64,000 bases of DNA. Source: Guillardia theta CCMP2712. Its lineage: Eukaryota; Protista; Cryptophyta. The stretch lies in NCBI RefSeq assembly GCF_000315625.1, contig NW_005434650.1, positions 462,005 through 526,004 on the forward strand, in the 5' to 3' direction. A program made the translations under genes and the position numbers. The notes beneath the pieces were generated by a model. It had not been told where the DNA came from and did no database searches. It was given only the letters and a program-made list of their open reading frames with translations. Of the stretch, positions 22,996 through 41,870 are shown piece after piece; the stretch's first letter is position 1, and each line of letters opens with the position of its first letter.

Positions 22996-24584
22996 ATGCA
23001 CCCCACCCCCAGCATGCAAACAGAGTTTTCCATCTTTCCTTCACATCCAGCGGGAGAGGAGGGGATAACAGACAGGAAACACCACAAGTCGATTTTCAAG
23101 ATCGAGATCGATGTCGAGGACAACCGTCACAGGCTTATCGATTCTTCTCAAGAGAAGACCTCCTCTTCCTCCTCCTATTCCTCAGCCCCCCACCCTCCTT
23201 CCTCCCGCCCACCACATGCGCAAGATGCCCGATGGGCGGCCAGGGTCGTTGCATTCCAGAACGGAGCGTGCAAGGTCATATGGAACAAGTACTCCATCAT
23301 CTGGCTCATGTCCACGGGCATCAGTCCCGTTCACATCGGCATGTTGAAGTCCGTCGGCCACCTCGTCAAGGCCTGTGCGCAGCCGCTCTGGGCGGTTATT
23401 GCTGATCGTCAGAGCACACTAGGTGAGGTCCCTGTGGTGCCCTGAACTGTCTTGCTGACGTCACGGTGGTAGATCGAGAGAACCAGCTCTTCTCGTTCTC
23501 CTCCCTCGCGCTGATCGCGTCCATCTTCTCAATGGAGATCTACAGGAGGTGCGTACAGTCGGACCTTTACGTGCTGTTCATGGCGCGGATCGCACTGGCT
23601 TCGCTCTCAGCGGGGCTTTCGTTGGTGGATGTAATCATAGCGGACCTTTCCTCCAGGAGCAGGGAGGGATACGGCAAGAATAGGATGTTCTACTCTGTGT
23701 CTTGGTGTGGGCTATCTCTCCTGGGAGGAGTGCTCATCGACAAGTTTGGGATCGGCGTGATCTTCCTGTGCACATACGTGTTCAGAGCCTGCCTGACGAT
23801 GACTCTCTGCTACCTGCAGTACACGATGCCATCGCCCCATGACGGTTCAGAGCTCGAGGCCCTCGACAAGGAGTCCGGGGGAGGGGACGGAAGTGACGCT
23901 GGAGGGGCGACGGGCGATAGGGCGGCAGTGGTGGGGTATCGAGAACTCCTGCAGGAGAGGGTCGTCAGGGATCTTCTCCTCTCCAACTTCATCTACGGGT
24001 TCGTCTACGTGGTCCCGACAACCATCACAGTGATGCAGCTGGAGGACCAGTTCGAGACCGGGAGGACTTTCATCGGGGCCGTGGGCGGGGTGATCATCTT
24101 CGGCACGCTGCCAGCGTTCTGGTTCAGCAAGAGTATCCTGGACAAGGTCGGGCTGATGGAAACTCAGAACTGGACCATGCTCCTGTTCGCGGTCGTGCTG
24201 TTCCTCTACTCGTTCGTCACGCAGCAGACGGTCTACGCCTTCCTCGTCCTCTCAGCTGTCAAAGGGGCACTGTTCGCACTCTTCACCACCGCAAGCGTGG
24301 AGTCTGCCACTGTGAACGTGGACTCGCGCTTCTTCGTGGTGACTCAATCTGCCATCAGCTGGTGCCACTACACCTTCGGCGCGGGTATCGGAAACATTTT
24401 CTGGGCCTTCATCTACCAGAAGCTGGGTTCCACTGCCGTCTACCAGTTTGCCTCGATATTCATGCTCGTCACCTACATCCTGTTCACCGAGACCTCGAGG
24501 GTGGCGAAGGCCCTGAGCATGAGCGTTATCCTCGTCGCTGTCCTGGTGGGTTGGAAGTTTATCGGTGAATTTCTGGAGGACTGA
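22996..24584 (+). CDS. Major facilitator superfamily transporter (MFS_1-like/MFSD6-like)
   Basis: Multiple TM segments, AQPLWAVIADR and YGKNRMFYSVSW..LGGVLID motifs; one intron at ~23423-23472. Confidence 0.85.
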
Positions 24585-29628: not shown

Positions 29629-32600
29629 ATGATGAGGAAATATCTTGGGGTATCAACACGAACTGTTGGGTTCTTCGTCTTCGCTGCAAATCTGTTCTTG
29701 TTCCTTCAATGGTCATTGGTGAATCGCTGGCGGAACAGGTAATCTAACTTCGTTTCGACTAGCACCATTGACTTGTTCTGAAGGAACAAGCTCGCTCTAT
29801 GTAGCATTCTACATCAAAAGTTGAAAGCAGGTAGTCGGAGTCACGGGTTCACCAGCTTGACCGACGTGAAGAGCTGGGAGGAGCTTGAGTGCAGCCGATT
29901 CTACCGCTCGCATGAGCTGAGTGACAGTTCCTTCCGCATCAGCCCACCCCGCACACCAAACAGCTCCTCCTCTCCTCCTCCCTCCTGCCCGCAAGCGTGC
30001 GTGGGTAGCTGGCAGCCGGGAGATTGGGTGCAGTGGTGCCCAGAGGACGAAAGAGACTGTGGGAGCACGTTCATCCCTTCGAGCCAGGACTGCCTGTACT
30101 ACTTCTACGATCGATGGGAGACAGCACGATGCCTGAGAGACAGCTGGGTTGTCATGCTGGGGAGCTCTGGAGTGACCAACCTAGGTGAGCTTCCTGGCTT
30201 GTTGGACAGTCTGCCCGCCTTACCTTCATGGCAGGACTGAGCTGGTTGTCGTCCCTTGACCCAACCTTGTCGGACTCGTTCAACGGTCCGCAATGGTACA
30301 ACATGAGCTGCTGGACGGAGAAGGGAGGCTGCTCGAAGCCGCTTCACACGGTCCCTGGCTTCGTGAACTTCGCTTACATGAGGCTGGATGTTGTCTTCGA
30401 TGGAGGAGGGAGAGTTGTCTACAAGAGCGGGGACAGAAACCTCTCTGACGCCCCTGTTGTCCCAGGAGGATGGAGACTGACGGTTATCCCTGTGCAGTAC
30501 GCGCATGAGGCCGTCACGCAGCTCAGAGACGCGATGAGGTGCAGCAGGGATCGGCAAGCGTCTCCCATCGTCTACGTGCAGGTGGGCCAGTGGTACCTCA
30601 ACGGGTTCGACGGGAAGTCGAGAGCATGGGGGCTGAACACGAGCGAGAGCCGCACGCTGCATGCGCTGAGGACAACGAATGAGCTCTTTCGGCTGTACAT
30701 GGAGGACATCGACTGGATGATCAGGAGGATGAAGACGATGCGCGTGTCGGCGATCGCCATCGGCAACATGCCGACCAGCAGGCACGCGTGCCGGAAGCGA
30801 GAAGCGCTGGGTTGCAGACAAGGGCTGAACAGGATCGTTGAGATGGTGGTAGAGGGGCACATGTCAGGCAGTAGTGCGAGGGGGGGAGGAGAGGGAAGGG
30901 AGGAGGAGGAGGAGGAGGAGGAGGAGGTGTCAGTCTTCATGGTTGACTGGTCTAGCGTCAGCATCGGGCAGCAGGGAGGAGCTCATTCGAGCCATCAGGC
31001 TGGTATCATGGGGATGCAGAGGATCCTGTCTGTACTCTGCGACCACGAGGACACGAGGACAGGCAGAGGAGGGGAGGGAGAAGGAGAGGAAAGAGCAGCG
31101 GGAGGGGCGGAGGAAAGGAAGAGAGCTGGAGAGCCAGTTCCAGGCATCGCGTCAAGGAGACGCTCGGCAAAGCAAGTCTGCGGGAAGTTTTCATCGTGGA
31201 GCTCCTCATGTGGGCCTTCAGGGGACTGGAGGACGATGATAGGGAGGAGATGCGATGTGAGCTTGTACAACATCACGGCGGAAGACGGCAGCAGCGTGAT
31301 CCGTGAAGTGATAAGTGGCAAGAGGAGCAGGAGGACGGGAAGGCTGATCATGTCAAAGAGCACGATCTCGCTGAAGGTGATGAAGAAGCTATCCGTCCCC
31401 ACCATCTCTCGCAGGATGCTGGAGCTCAGGCACGGGCTCCTCCTCCTTTTCGCTCTCCTGCTGGTGTACGTGCTGCATGCAGGTGAGATGGAAGAAATCG
31501 ACCTTGCCTGCTTGCTGCAGCTCCTCCGATCAGCTGGGAGACGAACCAAGAAGTCGCAACATGACTCGTTGACAAGTGCGGTTCCCATGCAATCTAGCAA
31601 ACAGTCAGATGCCGATGGTGCAGCATCATCCTCGTCAACGCCAGGGACAGAAGCAGGAGCAGGAGCGGGTAGAGGAAAAGGGGGCGAGAGGTTGGAGGCG
31701 ATCAGCGGAGCTCGTCTCATCGCATCTTTGCATGTCGTTGGTACACACCTCTCCCGCCTCTCCTCCTCCTCCTCGCATCCATACCTGCTGCAGTGGGGAT
31801 ACACGTGGGTCCCCTGGTTCTTCCTCTTGTCCGGCTACATTTTGACATTCGGGAGGGTAACGAGGAGGTCGAGGGCCGACGATCTCGATCCTCTGCAGTT
31901 TGTGTGGAAGCGATTGGCTGCTGTCTACCCGCTTTACATCTTTGGTGATATGCGTGTTGCTTGACTTCACTGTCCCGTCTGCTCATTCTCGATTTGCTTC
32001 CTGCCTCCTGGTTGTTTGTTCTGCAGGTCTTTTGTGCCCTTGGTGTATATCCTTGCATGTTTTTGTCTTCATCCTTGCACTGTGTTGTTCGAAGAAATCA
32101 CGATGGTCCTTGTTTGACCTCTCCACGTGATTGTGCAGGATTTGCAGTTTCTTTGATCTCTTCGCTCGGCTCTCACAACCTTCTTCGCTCCTTCTCCCTC
32201 TCCTCCATCATCATCCAGATGTTCTTGCTTCAATCTTGGTTCCCCTCGGAGACAGAGCACAGCCTGCAGGTAAGCAGGGGAGAACGCTTCTTGTCTCGTC
32301 AACAACTCCTCCTGTCTTTTCATAACCTCAACATGACTTCTCTACAACTCCATCTCTCCTCTCGCTCTCTCTCGCTCTCAATCGGTTGATTGTCGTTTTC
32401 CGACAGTCCCAGTGCTGGTTTCTCAGCTCGATCGTTCCCTTCTGGTACATGCACAACACGACGCTCAAACGTCTCCTGCTGCTGGATACCAAGGTTCTTG
32501 ACCCCCTTGGATGTCATGGTCGTTGATGCCAGCTTCTCGCTCAGAGGCTTCGCCTTCTCCTCTCGCTGCTGTTTGTTTTTCCTTGGATCTTCCTCTTCGT

Positions 32601-34300
32601 CCTGCCGTTCTTGTTGAGGGCCCCATTGGAATGGTACAAATATCACAAGGTGACTTGAGCGAGCTGTTGTGGAGCTTCTGACTTGTCTCCTCCTCGTTCT
32701 TCTTGATTTCTTCCTTTATTGTGTGATTGCTATTGAAAACGTCGTTATTCATGGCGATGACGATGATGATGGTGTTGATGACGACGACGATGTTCGCAGT
32801 GGGGGCGATTCGAGAATTGGGCTGACGTGCTGGTCGTCGTGCTCAAGTGACAAAATCAGTTCTCACCACATCAGCTACGAGACCTGACATCTCTTTCTTA
32901 TCTCTGTCGGCTTGTATTGTCAAATCTCCATCGTTGTTCCTGTTCTCTTGCTCTTTGAAATCTCTGTTCTTACCTCTGTTCTTCTTCTCTCTTCGCTCTC
33001 TACGTGTTATCTTGTCCTGCTTGTCTTGCTCACAGGTTCCATCCCTTCTGCTACTTCCACATGTACGTCACGGGGATGATCCTGGCCATCGTCTACGTGC
33101 GGCAGAAGCAACAGGGTGAGAAGGGAGGACATGGGAGGGAAGAAACATGAGGGGAGGAGGAAGGAACCAGAAGGGCAGCAGTACCAGAACGGAAGGGAGG
33201 AGGAGCGAGGAGGAGGAGAAGCGAGGAGGAGGAGGAGATGGATGATGATGATGATGATGAGTTGATGGTGGAGGACAAAACGACGGATAACAAGGAGGAG
33301 GAGGAGGAGGAGGAGAAGCGAGGAGGAGGAGGAGGAGGAGGAGAAGGAGGAAGGGGCAGGAGGGAGGTCTGATTCGTGATCAGGTTCAGTGCCATGGATG
33401 TGGCGCAGAGGGTCGCTCATAGGATATTCTCTCCTCCTCGTCGTCTTCTGCTTCCCTGCTATCCGTCCTCCTGCCAGCAAAGTGAGAGGACTACGTGCCT
33501 ATGATCGTGCTTCTCCTCCTTCTCTTGCTGCTGTTGCTGCTCCTCCTTCTACCTCTCTTTCCTTTTCTTCCGCTCCTACACCTGCTCTTGCTCCTGTTTC
33601 TTCGCTCCTGCTCCTGCTCCTCCTGCTCTTCCTTCTGGTATACATCCTACTCGTCCGCATTTCTCCCTTTCTCTTCATTTCTTCTCGCGCTCTTTTTCCC
33701 TTCCTTTGACTTCCTTTAGCTCCTCTGTCGCCTCGGCGGGCTGGCACCGCTGCAATGCTTGATCTTGATCGGGTTGTCGCAAGAGGAAGATGCGGTTGCG
33801 AGGTCAGTGAACGTTTGTTTGACTTGTCCTTTCTCTCTCCTTCTTGTTGTTTTCTCTTTTCTCACATCTTTGCTTCTCTCTGATCTTCTTCTTCAACTTC
33901 TTGTCTTTTTATCCTGCTCCTGCTCCCCTCCCACTCCTTCACCTGCTGCTGCACTCGCTGCACCTGCATCTCCTCCTCCTTGTCCATCGCTTCTATCTCT
34001 GCTCAGATTCTTCAAGACCAAGTTCATGGCATCACTGGGCAAGTTTTCCTACTGCATCTACATACTGCAAGTCAGTGGCAGCCTGGCATGTTTGACATGA
34101 TCACTAATTCTTGCCGACTGCAGTACATTGTATTCTGGTTGTGGGGAGGAGACGAGGTCTTGTCAGAATCGGTCAAGTTTTCTGCTGACGTCCATCAGGC
34201 GGATTTCGGGTTCTGGTTCCTTCTGGTTGTGTTGGCTGCAATCTCGTATCACACCATACAGGTGGAGATTGGTGTCAATGTTTGCTGCTGCTGCTGCTCC

Positions 34301-34331
<31 letters not shown>

Positions 34332-34380
34332 CCTGCTTCTGCTGCTGCTGCTGCTCCTGCTGCTGCTGCTCCTGCTCAAC

Positions 34381-34432
<52 letters not shown>

Positions 34433-37400
34433 TCTGCTTCTGCTCCTGCTTCTCCTCCTCCCTCTTGTGATGATTTTACCATGACGATTCTCAATTCCCA
34501 GGTTCCATGTACTTCAGATAAAGTTTTCTCGAAGATTGTCTACATTGCAGCAGGCAACACATCTAGATTCTTATCTCAACTTTGACCCCGACGATCCTTC
34601 AGCCTCCGCCTTCGCCTTGTTCTTTGCCGTTTCAGTCCTCCCAGATCCATGGAAGAACTATTTGTTCCAGAGAGGTAGGGAGGGAGGGGAGGGAGGTAGA
34701 GAAGGAGAGAGGGAGGGAGGTAGGGGAGGGGAGGGGAGGGAGGGAGGGAGGGAGGGAAAGCAGTCTTAGCACATGGCAAAGTTGTGAAGAATATGTTCAG
34801 GTTCTCTCAGCAAGCAGACGCCTTTCGCGATCATCTACGAGCAAGGGATCGTTGATGTCCGCCTTGATCTGCAGGTGATGTTTCGTCTTTGATCTTGTAA
34901 ATCAACACCTCTTGCCCGTAATCATTGCAATGACATTGAGAGTTTTATGTTGAAACATTTTCAAGTGTTTGTCTCTCATCACAGTGCAGATCCCGCAGCA
35001 AGATGAAGAGGATGCTTTCTGGGATTGGGAGAACAAGGGCCTGGTATATCGAATCGACCTCCCTTCAATTCTCACCTTGACAACCTGAAATTCATGTTTT
35101 GCCTTTCTCTTTTCTGTGCTTCTTCGTGATGATGTGTTAGTTTTCACTCACCTTCCCCCTGCAACAATCTTTCTATGTTTGTTGTCTTATTGCGTGTTGT
35201 TCGATCTTCCTCTTCCTCTCTCGCACCATCCACTTGCTCCTGACTGACTTCCCTCCTCGCTTCAGAACCACAAGGTCATCAACCCCTCCATTGCGGTCGA
35301 TCCCAAGGACTCGGACGTGCTGTGGGTGGCGGCAAGGCTTCATCGAGAAGACAAGGAGAAGTGAGAAGAGCGAAGAGTTGATCTCTTATCTGCAAACCTG
35401 TTCTGATTGCTCTGAATCCCTGTACATGTAAACATCACTTGTTGTGTTGCTTTGTTGTCTTGATCTTTGACACACTGCAAGACAAACATCCGTGGACTGA
35501 TATCTCTGATCTGTTTCTCCCATCTTCGGCAGCACCATTTTGCATGTTACAGTTGAGGCTTTTGTATGCCCTCATTCCTGGTACAGGCATCAAGTTCAAT
35601 CTAGAAGGAGGAGGAAGGCTGGTTCGAGGAAAGTGTCAAAGGCAGAGGACGTCGCTCTTTCTGTTTCCAAGTGGAATTCACGAATTGCAGGTTGAGATGT
35701 GTTGATGATCAAGATTGAGTTCTTCTGCCACCATGGCGACCATTACCTTCTTTCTTGTCTCCTCCTCCTCCTCACTCTCCCTCTCCTCCTCCTCCTCCTC
35801 CTCCTCCTCCTCCTCCTCCTCCTCCTCCTCCTCCTCCTCCTTCTCCTCCTCCTCCTCCTCCTCCTCCTCCTTGTTCGCCTCCCTCACTCCTCCTTGTCCG
35901 CCTCCCTCACTCCTTGCCCTCATTGTTCTCAAACCTGTCACAGTCGGAGTGCTCTCCGTCTCAAAACTCACAGACACCCACTGGAACACGTTCGCTCCCA
36001 TACATCCGGTGCAAACAACGACAAGACTGTCAAGGTTGCAAGCTGAAGTTTGATGTTCAGGTTGACATTCCTCTTCCTGCCGACATGAATCTCAACAGCT
36101 CGATCTGGACTCCTTGTCTTCCTCCTCCTCTCCGTCATCCTGTCAACAACTCGGCGACGCTGCGGTTCTCAACAGGCCCTGAGGATCCGAGGATCCAGGT
36201 GTGAAGATAGATGATCGTTGGGAGAGGAGCGAGGGGAGACGAGGAGACGGAGAGGCGAAGAGATAAACAGATGAAGAGAGGAGAGGGAGAGATGAACGAT
36301 AGAGTGGTGAATGTGGCGGTCATAGATGTCAGGAGATGTGGATTGGACGATGTCTCATTTTGTCCTGTCCTGTCCTGTCCTGTCCTGTCCTGTCCTGTCC
36401 TGTCCTGTCCTGTCCAGTCCTGTCCTGTCCAGTCCTGTCCTGTCCTGTCCTGTCCTGTCCTGTCCTGTCCTGTCCTGTCCTGTGTTCTCTCTCAATCTTA
36501 CCACCATCCCTCAGTTCGGCACGTCAGATTCGCAGATGCATATCACTTTCTTTTCGTTCGTCCCAGGGCATCGAGGCAAGACAGGTCTGTTTGACAACCT
36601 TGACCTTCTCCCAGTTCTCATGCTCAGCAGATATTCCTCCTCGTTGTTCCGATCCGACATCATACGGGAAATTCTACGAGACGATTGTGTTTGCTGAGGA
36701 AAACCGACTTGAGACCAAACAGGTGCTGGAGGAAACGGGGGCAAAGGATTGGTTGCATCTGAATTGACTGACAGTTGAGTTTCGATGGAGCTGAGCGTCA
36801 AGAGATCGAGAAGAATTGGATGAGGTGAGTGATACGAGGATGTCACTTTGACATGCGAGGAAGAGCAAAAGGAAGAGGAAGAGGAGGGGGAGAGGAAGAG
36901 GAAATGGAAAGGGAGGGGAGGGGAGGAGAGGAGAGAAGGGAAGGGAGGGAAGGGGAGAGGAGATGAGATGCTTGTCAGGTTTGAAGTGAAGGGAGTGGTC
37001 CATTACATCCGATCTCTCCACCCTTACATCGTCGTCCGGCAATCTTCTCGCAAAGCCTCAACTCAGGTGAATGAAATTGCGTTTTGTGCTCCTCCTCCTC
37101 CTCCTCCTCCTCCTCCTCCTCCTCCTCCTCCTCCTCCTCCTCCTCCTCCTCCTCCTCCTCCTCCTCCTCCTCCTCTTACCCTCCTCACTCCTCCTCCTAC
37201 CCTCCTCACTCCTCCTCCTGGTCCCCAGTCGTCTCCTCCTCATCCTCCTCATCCTCATTTTCGTCTTTCTTCTGTTTATTCCCATCCTTTTCATTACAAT
37301 TCTTGATAGGTCATTGTACGGACAGAAGTTCCTGCGTTCGCGCAAGTAGTGCAACATGAGAAGGTACGAGAAGGAGGAGGAGGAGGAGGAGAAGAAGGAG

Positions 37401-38157
37401 AAGGAGGAGGAGGAGGAGGGTTTCATCTCACTGTATTCCCGTAGCTCAAGATTCACGGAGGGAGCAACGCAGTGCTTGTCTGCGATGGAGGTAGCAGGAG
37501 GAAGACTGACGGTCTTCGTCTGACTGTCGTGATGTCAGTCGACTCGTCCTGCTACTTCCTTGCCGCGTTTCATACGGTCGACAAGAAGGGAAGGTGAGGC
37601 CGCGAGCAGACAAGACAAATAAAGAGAACGAGCAGGACAGGACAGGGCAGGGCAGGGCAGGGCAGGGCAGGGCAGGGCAGGGCAGGGCAGGGCAGGGCAG
37701 GGCAGGGGAGAACATGAAGAGCAATGGAGTTTGTGCACTTTGCTGACTGTCTTGTCATCTGCGCTCATCGCCATCTCTGATCTCTTCCGGCAGATATCTC
37801 AACTTTGCCTTCGCCTTCGACAATGAGAGACCTTTCAGCGTTCTCGCCTTAAGTCGCCAGGTGATCGCACTTGCTCTCAGAAGCACCTCAACTCGTGATG
37901 ACTGCGTTCGCAGCTCCCCCTCCTTAACAACGAGGGTCAGAACAACTTTTTGTCCGGCCTCGAAGTCGTCCAAGCCGGAGGAAACAAGTTTGTTCTCTTC
38001 ACATACGGGTGTAACGACGACCATAGTCGGTTGCTCAAGGTTGCTCTCGGATGTGACGACACTTGGTCTTGTGACAATCTCGCAGGTCCCGCTGTCTGTT
38101 GTACATGAATGGCTCTTTCCTCCTTCGCATGTATGGTCTTCATGTCTTTCCTTCTAG
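29629..38157 (+). CDS. Multidomain membrane protein: PC-esterase/SGNH-like + acyltransferase-3 + GH130/GT91-like beta-propeller
   Basis: About 25 exons join in phase. Signal anchor; CLYYFY...ARCLRDSWVVMLGSS and GAH; AT3 motifs RLEAISGAR, FFLLSG, KRLAAVYPLY, WFLS and LGKFSYCIYILQ; an extra TM across GC-AG intron 34554-34602; then NPSI, GPEDPR, EKNW, HGG, AFH and FLSGL...TYG..D. Confidence 0.8.
36361..36482. repeat. Intronic (TGTCC)n microsatellite
   Basis: Pentamer array. Other intronic arrays in this gene include (CCT)n at 35760-35870 and 37089-37175, and (GGGCA)n at 37644-37706. Confidence 0.9.
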
Positions 38158-38693
38158 CCAAGAGATGTTGATTTTCTGCTCCTTCAGAATCACTATCATC
38201 ACTTTTTACACCAACCTTACCCACTGGTGAGTTCAGTTCGCCGAGACAGAAAATTTCCTATATCGTTTCTCAAACTCTCTGCCTTGTTGTGATGAGGTTG
38301 TGTTTGCAGTTAACGAAAACTCTAGTGAGATCGTCTTTTCGGTTTCTGGACCGCATGATCGCCGGCAATCGAACAAGACAGGAGACCAAGTTTGTCTTCT
38401 GAGTCTTTATTCTTTCTCAACAAATCTTCTCATGAAGACGTGTTGTTTTCCGCCCGAAACCTTCAAACTTCACATGTCCTCTGCTGATCCATCTGCTTTC
38501 GTCTTTGTACATCATCGCGCCATCCTTATTTCTCATCACCCATCGCACTTCCCCATCGCACTTCTTCTCACTTGCTCGACAATCACTTGCATCACTTCAA
38601 TATCACCAAAAACTCGCACCAAGTCTCCTCAAGATCTCTCCCCTCTCAACTCGTTGCTTCATCACGCTCCTCTCAGCACATGTGCCCTCCTCC

Positions 38694-38924
38694 TCAGAGC
38701 GCCATAGTTCCCACGTTCGGCATCAGGTTTCCTCCAGCGCCTTGCTGGGTGTAGTAAGCGCCGTTGGCGACGAAGTTCGAGATCATCTCCACTGACTCGA
38801 CGTCAGCTACAGGGTAAGAAGAAGCTTCTCCTCACCTTGACCGGCTCCGAGGATTTCTGAAGTTTGCGGGTGGGAGAGGACGAGTTTGGCAACTTCAAAC
38901 TGAGAAGGTAAGAAAAAGTTAGCG

Positions 38925-38964
<40 letters not shown>

Positions 38965-41453
38965 TGGTGGTGGTGGTGGTACGGGTAGAGAAGGAGGGTG
39001 GAGAGGGAGGAGGAAGAGGAGGAGGAGGAGGAGGAGGAGGAGGAAGTGGAGGAGGAGGACGAGAGAGAAGGAGGGGGAGCAAGGATGATCGCGAGTCTCG
39101 ATTTCTCTCCCCTACCTTCTCATCCAGCGCTCGCTTGCTGCTCTCGGCCTTTCTGTCCAGCAGGAACGCCAGGAAATCCCCGTGAGAGAAAAGTTTCTTC
39201 ACACCCCAAGCGTGATGCGCCATCGACTTAAACATGCAGATCGCTCCCACCTGTCGCTGCTCAATCCACCACCTCCACCTCCTCCTCCTCGACTTCCCCC
39301 TCCTCCCATCCATAACTGGTTTCCTTCCTTCCTCCTCCCTTATGATCTGCCTCAAACCTCGTCTCCTTCTTCCTCATCTTCGCTCTTCCTCTTCCTCGGC
39401 CTCTCTCCCCTCCTTCCCTCACTTTCTCCTCTTGGATCGGACATTTCGCCAGCTTGATCAAAGGTTCCATCACATCCCCAAGCCCCTCAGCGAAAATCGT
39501 CGACGCCGCTTCTCCCTCCTCCTCAGCAAACTTTGCCGATCTGTTTGCTCATCAACTATCCTCGTCGACCTCCCTCCCTCCCTCCCTCCCTCCCTCCAAC
39601 CTGATCGCCTCCACACACAAGGAGAGAGTTGCGAGCTTGAGATCCGACTGCTGGCTCTGCGGGGCGAGTGAGGCCGAGCACGTCACGGGCACGAGCGACC
39701 TTGAGGTTTGATGAGACGCCCCGGCAGACGGAGGGGAGAGTTTTGCTCCTCACCAAGACTTGAAGAGGGTCAGAAGGCACCGAAGGGAAGAGGGAGCAAA
39801 GGAGGAGAGAGGAGGAGAGGAGAGAGGGGGGCGACAAAGAGCAAGGGAAAGTTACGGCAAGGGCAGCAGGAGCGGTTGATGAAAGGGATGAGGATGGAAG
39901 AAAGGAGGGCAGAGGAAAGTTGCCAGCGAAGGGAGAAAGGAGGAGGGATGCAGACTAGGGAGGGAGGGAGAGGAAACAAGGGACAGTCTGCTGCTCACTT
40001 TTCAACCCTCGGGGAGAGGAGCTCAGTACAGAAAGGACATTCAGCATGTCGACTTGCTCTTGCACGCTCGAACTCTTGCGAGTGTCGTCAGCGCTCGAGC
40101 CGATTCTCCGCCCTCCTCCTACCTCTCCTCTTGCTCTCTGGCTCACAGTCTCGCAGAACCTTCCCTCCAACTCTGCGGAGGACTCAACTTCCCCTGCCAA
40201 ACGATCGTCATGAGGGAGGAAGTGAGGGGGGAGAGGGAGGAAGGGAAACGGGATGAGAGTAGACAGTGTTGAGCAGAGGAAACACGGGCAAGAAGAAGAT
40301 ATGCGAAAAGTGGAGAAGGGGAGTGCAGAGCAGTGCACAGAAGAGTAGAGCAGAGTAGAGCAGAGTAGAGCAGAGCAGAATGGAGTGGAACAAGAGAGGA
40401 GAGGACGGAGGAGGAGAGCAGAACTAGTAACGCTCCTCGACCTGCAAGAAATCTCGCACATGCCTCTAGCAACCTTGCCGGCACTGCTCCACTGCCCAGG
40501 GTGCTCTCAGCTACCTGAAGGAGGTGCACGAGAAGTTCCTGAAGAGCCCGTGAGGTTGAAAGGGGAAGGTGGAGGAAGAAGAGGAGACTGGGGCAGGGAG
40601 GAGAGGGGAGAGGAGCACAAGAAAGAAACAAGGACAGTGAGCAGGCGAGAGGGACAGAGGAAGAGGAGCAGGAAGAGGAGGAGCAGGAAGAGGAGCAGGA
40701 AGAGGAGGAGCAGGAAGAGGAGCAGGAAGAGGAGCAGGAAGAGGAGAGGAAGAGGGAACGCGGCGCTACCTTGCCGATCTCATGCGAAGGCAACAGCGCA
40801 ATCACTTCTACCGCGTTGAGCTGCAGCAATATGTCGTCGGAGTGGATGATTGCAACCAGCTGATCCTTGGCTCCAGTTGACTTGAAGACCTCCGTCTCGT
40901 CCTCCCTCCTCCTCCACGCCGTGCAGATGAACTCCAGCACTCGGAAAGCGACAACAGCCTGCTCTCTGTCACAGATGATCTTGCTCATGTGCGCGACGTG
41001 GCGCTCGTTGAAGACGACTCGCACTCCACTGGGCTGCCCCACGGCTCTCAGGAGAGCAGAGGAGGCGGCAGAAGACATCTGGATGCTCTCGTCGGAGAGC
41101 ATCTTGACGAGCAGGAAGACTATATCTCTCTCCTGTAGCCATAGGAGGTCTCCCTCGTTCCCCATGAGCTTCTCCACTAGCTTGATAGTGGACTTCCGCA
41201 CAACATCGCTGGGGTGCTGAAGACCTAGAGGAAACAACTCCGATCCTTGCTGCTTGAGGACATTGAGGTCCTCCTGAGAGCTCTCTGAGAACAGCTTGTT
41301 GAGACACTTGGAAACAAGCTCGACATGATTGGCATCGTTGAGCAGCTCCAGCAACTTGGGCAGCGGAACAGCGGCAAGCAGGGCGGACTTGCTCTCTGCC
41401 GTTGCGGGTAAGCGATCGAAGTCTTGAAGCTTTGCTGCTATGTCGATAGCCAT
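38694..41453 (-). CDS. PSMD5: 26S proteasome assembly chaperone PSMD5 (S5b/Hsm3-like)
   Basis: HEAT/ARM-like helical protein with LGLQHPSDVVR, SDDILLQLNAVE, and C-terminal WG..L....DFLAFLLDRKAE..K...K-FE and GAYY patterns typical of PSMD5. Confidence 0.75.
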
Positions 41454-41870
41454 ACTTCGAAGAAACGATCGTTCCTGCTCCGCTGGGGATGGAAGCTAAG
41501 GGTCAGAGAACTTTTACAGCATCTCCAAGGAACATGGAACATTTTCCAGCTTACATTTTCCTTCTACTACTAATGCGACAGTCCTTGTCTCTGGTGTCTA
41601 TCCTTCCCACTCAATCTCCACGTCAACCTCAAAATAAAGAATTCTTACATGCCTCATCACACCTGCCATATCCATACTCTCCCTACCTCACGGTTATCAT
41701 TCTTCTGCCTGGAGAATTATTTAATCTTTCTACCTTAACATCCCTCCCGGTCCTCAACTTCTTTCTTCCTCATCCTGATCATAGTTCTGATGACCCTGAC
41801 CATCCCTATTCTTATCCCTATCATCCTCCTCCTCCTCCTCCTCCTCCTCCTCCTCCTCCTCCTCCTCCTC

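What the first reader, a model, noticed from the sequence alone, without database searches (positions are those of the whole stretch)
29629..38157. Hidden three-module glycan-modifying enzyme: SGNH-like + acyltransferase-3 + GH130/GT91-like propeller in one polypeptide
Seen: about 25 exons join in phase from a signal anchor at 29629 to a stop at 38157. They encode (i) a luminal Cys-rich domain with CL..WV.LGSS and a later GAH, (ii) a multi-TM domain with AT3 motifs, and (iii) after one more TM, a soluble domain with NPSI (~35281), GPEDPR (~36175), EKNW (~36808), HGG (~37454) and YG..D (~38004). Known: PC-esterase/SGNH domains paired with membrane acyl-donor domains form O-acetylation systems (CASD1; bacterial OatA/OafA, where SGNH is C-terminal to AT3). 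EDPR/EKNW mark five-bladed propellers of GH130 mannoside phosphorylases and GT91 beta-1,2-mannosyltransferases. Inference: a single-chain assembly line that builds or remodels a beta-mannan-type glycan and O-acylates it, with SGNH-AT3 order reversed relative to OatA. I know of no characterised protein with this architecture. The ORF track fragments it completely.
Basis: partly seen in the sequence, partly recalled or inferred. Interest (0 to 1): 0.85.

Follow-up and report, generated by a model that had tools for sequence, protein, structure and literature searches.

The report
Three-enzyme algal glycan acetylation protein
A cryptophyte alga makes one membrane protein that joins an acetyl-group carrier, an acetyl-transferring enzyme and a probable mannose-adding enzyme; the same design is kept in dinoflagellates and other microbial eukaryotes, I found no description of it, and it probably builds an acetylated sugar chain, though no activity has been tested.

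Summary
The gene is real. It is Guillardia theta GUITHDRAFT_137224, publicly labelled only as 'acyltransferase 3'. My model has 33 exons (29629-38402, 1,496 aa). Predicted folds: the N domain is closest to XOAT1/PC-esterase (Z 16.1), the C domain to GH130 propellers (Z 25.3). The SGNH Ser and His, the AT3 R-X10-H motif and the GH130 catalytic Asp are invariant in the roughly 20 relatives aligned. Two relatives carry all three modules in one uninterrupted genomic ORF. Correction: SGNH-before-AT3 is the known Cas1p/CASD1 order; the new part is the propeller, which sits where OatA/OafB carry their SGNH domain. Best reading (about 50%): a secretory-pathway enzyme that adds beta-1,2-mannose from GDP-mannose and O-acetylates the glycan. 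Not a Pfam member of GH130, GT91 or PC-esterase. No read-level RNA check was possible, and exons 1-2 lack direct junction evidence.

The parts
29629..29738 (+). Exon 1: start codon and N-terminal hydrophobic signal/anchor (aa 13-31)
   Evidence: Sequence; hydropathy; same start in public model P0017. Junction not seen in RNA.
29784..30184 (+). Exon 2: Cys-rich cap and SGNH block I (G-S-S, Ser165 codon at 30166-30168)
   Evidence: Ser in 18 of 18 covering rows; 69% identical to a Hanusia phi protein
30235..31944 (+). Exon 3 (1,710 nt, one open frame): rest of the PC-esterase/SGNH-like domain (Trp290; His421 codon at 30984), TM segment about 31430-31480, low-complexity linker, and start of AT3 (R-X10-H codons 31713 and 31746, FFxxSG)
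   Evidence: Open frame; fold match to XOAT1 Z 16.1; PF01757; L002 covers 31112-31944 unspliced
32139..34261 (+). Exons 4-13: body of the AT3 membrane domain (includes the 47-nt exon 32800-32846)
   Evidence: All junctions in spliced contig L002; PF01757 E 8.9e-14; alignment A4
34502..34674 (+). Exons 14-15: end of AT3 and the extra (11th-type) TM helix, split by the GC-AG intron
   Evidence: the homologous helix is present in P0064, P0065, P0066
34554..34602 (+). 49-nt GC-AG intron that contains the TGA at 34583-34585; the hinge of the fusion
   Evidence: Spliced out in L002
34801..38130 (+). Exons 16-31: five-bladed beta-propeller of the GH130/GT108/GT91 type (NPS 35281, GPEDPR 36175, EKNW 36808, HGG 37454, YG..D 38004)
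   Evidence: Model pLDDT 86; Z 25.3 to RaMP1; junctions in L002
38188..38402 (+). Exons 32-33: short C-terminal tail and stop TGA 38400-38402
   Evidence: same tail in public model P0017 and similar tail in P0064

Best explanation
A single polytopic ER/Golgi enzyme that builds and O-acylates a glycan. Shown: one reading frame with PC-esterase/SGNH-like, AT3 and GH130-type propeller folds, each with its main catalytic residues kept. Inferred: (1) the N domain is luminal; a TM returns the chain to the cytosol; the AT3 bundle starts and ends on the cytosolic side; the extra TM places the propeller in the lumen, at the spot where OafB/OatA carry SGNH. (2) AT3 takes an acyl group, most likely acetyl, from cytosolic acyl-CoA through R-X10-H and presents it on the luminal side. 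(3) Ser165/His421 form an acyl-enzyme and pass the group to a sugar hydroxyl, as XOAT1, CASD1 and OatA do. (4) The propeller acts as an inverting beta-1,2-mannosyltransferase using GDP-mannose, like GT91/GT108, and makes or extends the acceptor. The product would be an O-acetylated beta-mannosyl glycan on a surface or secreted polymer.
For: Spliced contig joins AT3 and propeller; SGNH and AT3 share one open frame. Single uninterrupted genomic ORFs with all three modules in L260 (1,294 aa) and L263 (2,029 aa); same order in L003, L254, L261. AT3 and propeller trees share their starred clades, and pairwise identities of the domains track each other (Spearman 0.71-0.88), which fits a stable old fusion. 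Propeller: equivalents of BT3780 N74, R89, E141, D142, K199, Y302 are invariant in 20 of 20 rows, D363 is D in 17 and N in 3, and the phosphate-site His is invariant; no acidic base at either hydrolase position (PMC4599007, PMC7660257). All beta-1,2-specific GH130 phosphorylases tested can use GDP-mannose (PMC12814180). Luminal signs: 17 Cys and 5 sequons in the N domain; PAN and ILEI domains N-terminal in relatives. GH130 phosphorylases are cytoplasmic (PMC4599007), which argues against that role in a lumen.
Against: No activity is measured. The K199 and R168/E227 equivalents were placed by motif, not by the profile alignment, which slips there. Identity to GH130 structures is only 12-17%, so sugar and linkage may differ. 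G. theta keeps Arg at the R168-like place, which in GH130 binds phosphate, and transferase versus phosphorylase cannot be read from the active site alone (PMC10913872). The second Arg of the AT3 RxxR motif is absent in all 21 rows. The SGNH domain lacks D-x-x-H; the family has E-x4-H and G. theta has Gln there. Topology rests on hydropathy and analogy; flanking charges at the first two TM segments are ambiguous. I found no report of acetylated beta-mannan in cryptophytes.
Confidence: 0.5

Rival explanations
1. Same coupled build-and-acylate design, but with another donor sugar, linkage or acyl group (for example another GDP-sugar, or succinyl/propionyl).
For: 12-17% identity to GH130 structures; no Pfam hit to GH130 or GT91; unusual AT3 (no second RxxR Arg) and SGNH (E-x4-H) motifs; one relative sits next to an NDP-sugar epimerase gene.
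Against: The mannose-binding and linkage residues known from GH130 (N, R, E/K pair, F, D) are nearly all invariant.
Confidence: 0.2
2. The propeller is a phosphorylase or dual transferase/phosphorylase (GT108-like) that cycles a beta-1,2-mannan, possibly on the cytosolic side.
For: Top structural hits are GH130 phosphorylases; G. theta has Arg, His, His, Tyr at the four phosphate-site places.
Against: 16 of 20 rows have Tyr instead of that Arg; an extra TM after AT3 predicts a luminal propeller by analogy with OafB TMH11 (PMC9833829); characterised GH130 phosphorylases are cytoplasmic (PMC4599007).
Confidence: 0.12
3. A remodelling enzyme: the SGNH domain removes acyl groups and the propeller trims mannosides, with AT3 re-acylating (the 'opposing activities' idea of PMC2824669).
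For: SGNH folds are mostly esterases; secreted GH130 members are beta-1,2-mannosidases with the same E/K pair (PMC4599007).
Against: No Glu/Asp at either hydrolase-base place in any of 20 rows; phosphate-site His invariant; the closest N-domain structure, XOAT1, is a transferase (own knowledge).
Confidence: 0.1
4. The propeller or the SGNH domain is catalytically silent in G. theta and only binds the glycan; AT3 alone does the acyl transfer.
For: Gln replaces the family's conserved Glu five residues before the His in G. theta; stand-alone AT3 proteins work without SGNH (PMC9558356).
Against: Ser, His and the propeller's catalytic Asp are invariant across rows only 22-33% identical.
Confidence: 0.05
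5. The 5' SGNH exons and the AT3-propeller part are separate transcripts in this species; the full fusion is a modelling artefact.
For: Both cryptophyte transcript-type contigs (L002, L007) begin just after the SGNH His; no read-level check was possible.
Against: Both contigs are open-framed to their 5' edge, next to a purine-rich low-complexity stretch; SGNH and AT3 lie in one exon; intact single-ORF relatives exist; word share fits the whole mRNA.
Confidence: 0.03

Closest known systems
Cas1p / CASD1 (PC-esterase + 10-TM acyltransferase, PF07779)
   Same: N-terminal luminal PC-esterase/SGNH-like domain followed by a multi-TM acyltransferase of the AT3 superfamily; Cas1p acetylates mannose of glucuronoxylomannan (PMC2824669).
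   Different: The membrane domain scores as PF01757, not PF07779; no GDS or D-x-x-H motif; an added C-terminal propeller.
Bacterial AT3-SGNH proteins OafA/OafB/OatA
   Same: R-X10-H and FFxxSG motifs; an extra TM after the 10-TM AT3 leading to an extracytoplasmic domain (PMC9833829, PMC9558356).
   Different: The domain after the extra TM is a glycosyl-enzyme propeller; SGNH is N-terminal; the second RxxR Arg is absent.
XOAT1/TBL29 (PC-esterase, PDB 6cci)
   Same: Best structural match of the N domain, including the Cys-rich cap: Z 16.1, 226 residues, rmsd 3.4; Trp after strand 3.
   Different: 12% identity; no PF13839 hit; E-x4-H (Q in this species) instead of D-x-x-H; fused to its own acyl-donor domain.
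GH130 mannoside phosphorylases/mannosidases and GT108 MTPs
   Same: Five-bladed propeller (Z 21-25 to GH130, 18 to a Leishmania GT108-type chain); catalytic Asp and -1/+1 residues kept.
   Different: No PF04041 hit; membrane-tethered and probably luminal; fused to acylation modules.
GT91 Bmt beta-1,2-mannosyltransferases (PF12141)
   Same: TM 0.60/0.63 to a BMT cluster model; membrane-anchored secretory-pathway propeller using GDP-mannose (own knowledge).
   Different: PF12141 matched only 1 of 20 rows at E 0.05; several uncharacterised viral, bacterial and fungal propeller clusters score as well or better; no residue-level comparison was possible.

Membership tests
AT3 (PF01757) | Profile score above the curated cut-off | tested here: met
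   51.7 bits against 31, model positions 3-314 of 326
AT3 (PF01757) | R-X10-H in TM1 and FFxxSG | tested here: met
   Invariant in 21 of 21 rows
AT3 (PF01757) | RxxR at the cytoplasmic face of TM3 | tested here: not met
   First Arg invariant and preceded by K/R; second Arg absent in all 21 rows
SGNH superfamily | Alpha/beta/alpha fold with Ser after strand 1 and His before the last helix | tested here: met
   All 50 listed structural hits but a few are SGNH/GDSL proteins; Ser 18/18, His 19/19
PC-esterase (PF13839) | W/H after strand 3 in place of GxND | tested here: met
   Trp in 20 of 20 covering rows (criterion from PMC2824669)
PC-esterase (PF13839) | GDS motif and D-x-x-H triad; Pfam match | tested here: not met
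   G-[GSA]-S instead of GDS; E-x4-H in 16 of 19 rows, Q in this protein; no PF13839 hit, NXPE4_C in 3 of 24 rows
Cas1/CASD1 (PF07779) | Cas1_AcylT membrane domain | tested here: not met
   Only PF01757 matched at E up to 1
GH130 (PF04041) | Five-bladed propeller with catalytic Asp and -1 site residues | tested here: met
   Z 25.3; HHalign 92.8% to a BT3780-like profile puts N74, R89, E141, D142, Y302, F344, D363 in register
GH130 (PF04041) | Sequence-level family match | tested here: not met
   1 of 20 rows at E 0.18; none in the genome
GH130 hydrolase subgroup | Acidic catalytic base at E227/E268 places | tested here: not met
   R/Y/Q and R/H/S at those places; the E227 place was set by motif only
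GH130 phosphorylase subgroups | R/H phosphate pair and cytoplasmic location | tested here: inconclusive
   His invariant; Arg in 3 of 20 rows including this one; location inferred luminal
GT91 (PF12141) | Profile match | tested here: not met
   1 of 20 rows at E 0.05; genome search blank but its control rang nowhere
GT91 / GT108 | beta-1,2-mannosyl transfer from GDP-mannose | not testable with these tools
   Needs an enzyme assay

The most novel reading that the evidence does not exclude
An undescribed, old family of single-chain glycan synthases in algae and other microbial eukaryotes: a luminal GDP-mannose-dependent propeller from an unclassified branch of the GH130/GT108/GT91 group makes a beta-1,2-mannosyl glycan and hands it to an SGNH acyltransferase with an unusual Ser-His-Glu triad, fed by an AT3 carrier between the two. 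It would point to an O-acetylated beta-mannan not yet reported from these algae.
Probability: 0.4. Interest if true: 0.75.

Novelty: new variant of a known kind. Interest (0 to 1): 0.6.

Why it matters
How O-acetylation is timed with glycan synthesis in eukaryotes is poorly resolved, since donor carrier, acetyltransferase and glycosyltransferase are usually separate proteins (own knowledge). Here evolution has kept all three in one chain across distant algae, which gives a single test system. The propeller is also a eukaryotic branch of a fold with few characterised transferases, and the family predicts a specific modified glycan on cryptophytes and coral-symbiont dinoflagellates whose surface chemistry is little known.

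Tried and rejected
My own joined model was never typed or searched: it was checked exon by exon for phase and stops only; whole-protein searches used database records by id (P0014, P0017). No junction-spanning pattern was searched. An intron at 31483-31533 was considered and dropped: L002 and the relative P0064 keep it as coding. First guesses for two junctions (36035-36098; stop at 38108 or 38157) were overturned by L002. The public model's direct jump from exon 13 to 34554 and its skipping of exon 32545-32649 are not supported by L002. Pfam on single exons found only AT3. PDB sequence searches with the domain profiles found nothing. No close relative in bacterial/archaeal genomes, viral contigs, plasmids or phages. 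No paralogue in this genome beyond one 23-residue propeller match on contig C76. The metagenome scan for the 5' exon gave nothing. Paper searches for the accession and for the architecture were blank; the library lacks most subscription papers.
Full report
Source and identity. The genome is 87.1 Mb in 669 contigs. The cluster look-up names the gene: GUITHDRAFT_137224 of Guillardia theta CCMP2712, 1,479 aa, called 'hypothetical protein' or 'Acyltransferase 3 domain-containing protein'. So a model spanning the whole fusion is public, but two of its three modules are unnamed.

Observation. I built an exon model by hand and checked phase and stops exon by exon. The hinge is at 34502-34602: read straight on, the exon stops at TGA 34583-85. 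A search with the SGNH exon returned P0014, a 985-aa protein identical to the window, encoded on a 4,887-nt JGI contig, L002. L002 maps to the window from 31112 to 38793 with no mismatch and no gap, through 29 canonical introns, one of them GC-AG at 34554-34602. It differs from the NCBI model at several junctions and includes untranslated sequence, so I take it as a transcript assembly and not a model export (inference). It refutes the 'two genes' case for AT3 and propeller. The final model has 33 exons, 1,496 aa, stop at 38400-38402. SGNH-like and AT3 parts share one 1,710-nt exon, so their link needs no splicing.

Introns 1 and 2 have no direct evidence. Indirectly, RNA-like runs X1 and X2 hold 0.41 and 0.38 of the region's sampled words; the whole mRNA predicts 0.39 and the part from 31112 only 0.24. 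These runs are guessed to be RNA, and retained introns could add words, so this is support, not proof.

Relatives. The public model found 24 proteins. All but one carry AT3 followed by the propeller at E below 1e-4 per domain, and the remaining one reaches the start of the propeller. Most with enough N-terminal sequence also carry the SGNH-like domain. Named ones are dinoflagellates: Biecheleria, Durusdinium, Symbiodinium; a Hanusia phi protein matches exon 2 at 69%. The rest come from unnamed metagenome or transcriptome contigs, so the full range is not established. L260 (a 309-kb contig) and L263 hold all three modules in one uninterrupted ORF; L003, L254 and L261 show the same order with introns. 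Trees of AT3 and of the propeller share their strongly supported clades, and pairwise identities correlate between domains (0.88, 0.71, 0.74); this fits a stable inherited fusion and is not evidence of functional co-evolution. Some relatives add PAN, ILEI or beta-lactamase-like domains in front. Two searches for stand-alone relatives of either soluble domain returned only five short proteins, mostly fragments of the same genes, within the length and word limits of that tool.

N domain. The model (pLDDT 78) matches XOAT1 best (Z 16.1, 226 aligned, rmsd 3.4), then GDSL/SGNH esterases, PatB and OatA. The language-model search gives algal clusters, some with PC-esterase or NXPE4_C labels. Ser165 (18/18), Trp290 (20/20) and His421 (19/19) are invariant. 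The usual D-x-x-H is absent; the family has Glu five before the His in 16 of 19 rows, and this protein has Gln. It works like a PC-esterase-type acyltransferase but fails strict membership.

AT3. PF01757 passes its cut-off. R-X10-H and FFxxSG are invariant in 21 rows; the second Arg of RxxR, essential in OafB (PMC9833829), is missing throughout, while a Lys and an Arg further on are invariant and may stand in for it (inference).

Propeller. The model (pLDDT 86) matches GH130 enzymes at Z 21-25, above GH43/GH32 at 18 or less, and the Leishmania GT108-type chains. In the Atlas the nearest shapes are uncharacterised giant-virus, phage, bacterial and fungal propellers and a BMT cluster, all at TM 0.60-0.65. 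To place residues I fetched a BT3780-like protein and bridged to it with EKNW-type prokaryotic and viral propellers (those were picked by motif, so their scores are inflated). HHalign (92.8%, E 5.6e-8) puts N74, R89, E141, the catalytic D142, E268, Y302, F344 and D363 in register. K199 and E227/R168 were placed by motif. The family keeps N, R, E, D, K, H, Y in 20 of 20 rows. [quoted passage not shown] Beta-1,2-specific GH130 enzymes and GT108 can use GDP-mannose (PMC12814180), and transferase versus phosphorylase cannot be read from the active site (PMC10913872).

How it most likely works. Hydropathy gives an N-terminal anchor, one TM before AT3 and one after it, in this protein and most relatives. 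With AT3's N-terminus cytoplasmic and an 11th helix leading outward as in OafB, both soluble domains face the lumen. Cys content, sequons and PAN/ILEI partners agree, though flanking charges are ambiguous. The simplest working order is: AT3 carries acetyl from cytosolic acetyl-CoA; Ser165 takes it; the propeller adds beta-1,2-mannose from GDP-mannose; the SGNH domain acetylates the product. Folds and residues are shown on predicted models and alignments; location, substrates and coupling are inferred. I give this 0.5, a same-design variant with other substrates 0.2, phosphorylase 0.12, remodeller 0.1.

Comparison with what is known. An AT3 with an extra TM and an outside domain is the OafA/OatA plan (PMC9558356). 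What I did not find in the papers searched is a GH130/GT91-type propeller in that place, or this family at all. One bacterial-collection locus, L096, has an AT3 gene overlapping an EKNW-type propeller gene by four bases, after a nucleotide-sugar dehydrogenase gene; it is a single case among 240 loci and only a hint that the pairing is functional. Two unchecked scan notes report other multi-enzyme glycan fusions in this genome, so such fusions may be common here; I did not test them.

Verdict. A real, expressed and conserved three-module enzyme; a new variant of the Cas1/AT3-SGNH O-acylation kind with an added, probably transferase-type, mannoside propeller. Interest 0.6: undescribed and directly testable, but built from known parts and with no activity shown.

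Noticed in passing
window 38310-41484; L002:3011-4887: The spliced contig runs on into the convergent minus-strand neighbour, a proteasome chaperone PSMD5/S5b gene (PF10508); the two 3' ends overlap enough to assemble tail to tail.
   Followed up: partly
window 30969-30971: Gln in place of the Glu that 16 of 19 relatives have five residues before the SGNH His; close relatives P0001, P0065, P0066 keep Glu.
   Followed up: partly
L260:8423-13885: Intronless three-module gene directly downstream of an NDP-sugar epimerase/dehydratase gene on a 70% GC eukaryote-like contig.
   Followed up: partly
L261:3413-5261: A GT15 mannosyltransferase gene and a second, stand-alone SGNH-like ORF of this family lie 3-5 kb upstream of the three-module gene.
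   Followed up: no
L096:707-2943: Prokaryotic locus with an AT3 gene overlapping an EKNW-type propeller gene, after a UDP-glucose/GDP-mannose dehydrogenase gene.
   Followed up: partly
G000:C76:236514-236582 (L013): A 23-residue match to the propeller profile (H..Y region); possibly an exon of another propeller gene.
   Followed up: partly
window 23466-24584 (+): 372-aa hydrophobic ORF that looks like a major-facilitator-type transporter exon; not checked.
   Followed up: no
P0070, P0072, P0083, P0105: Relatives add four ILEI domains, PAN domains or a beta-lactamase-like domain in front of the SGNH-like domain.
   Followed up: partly
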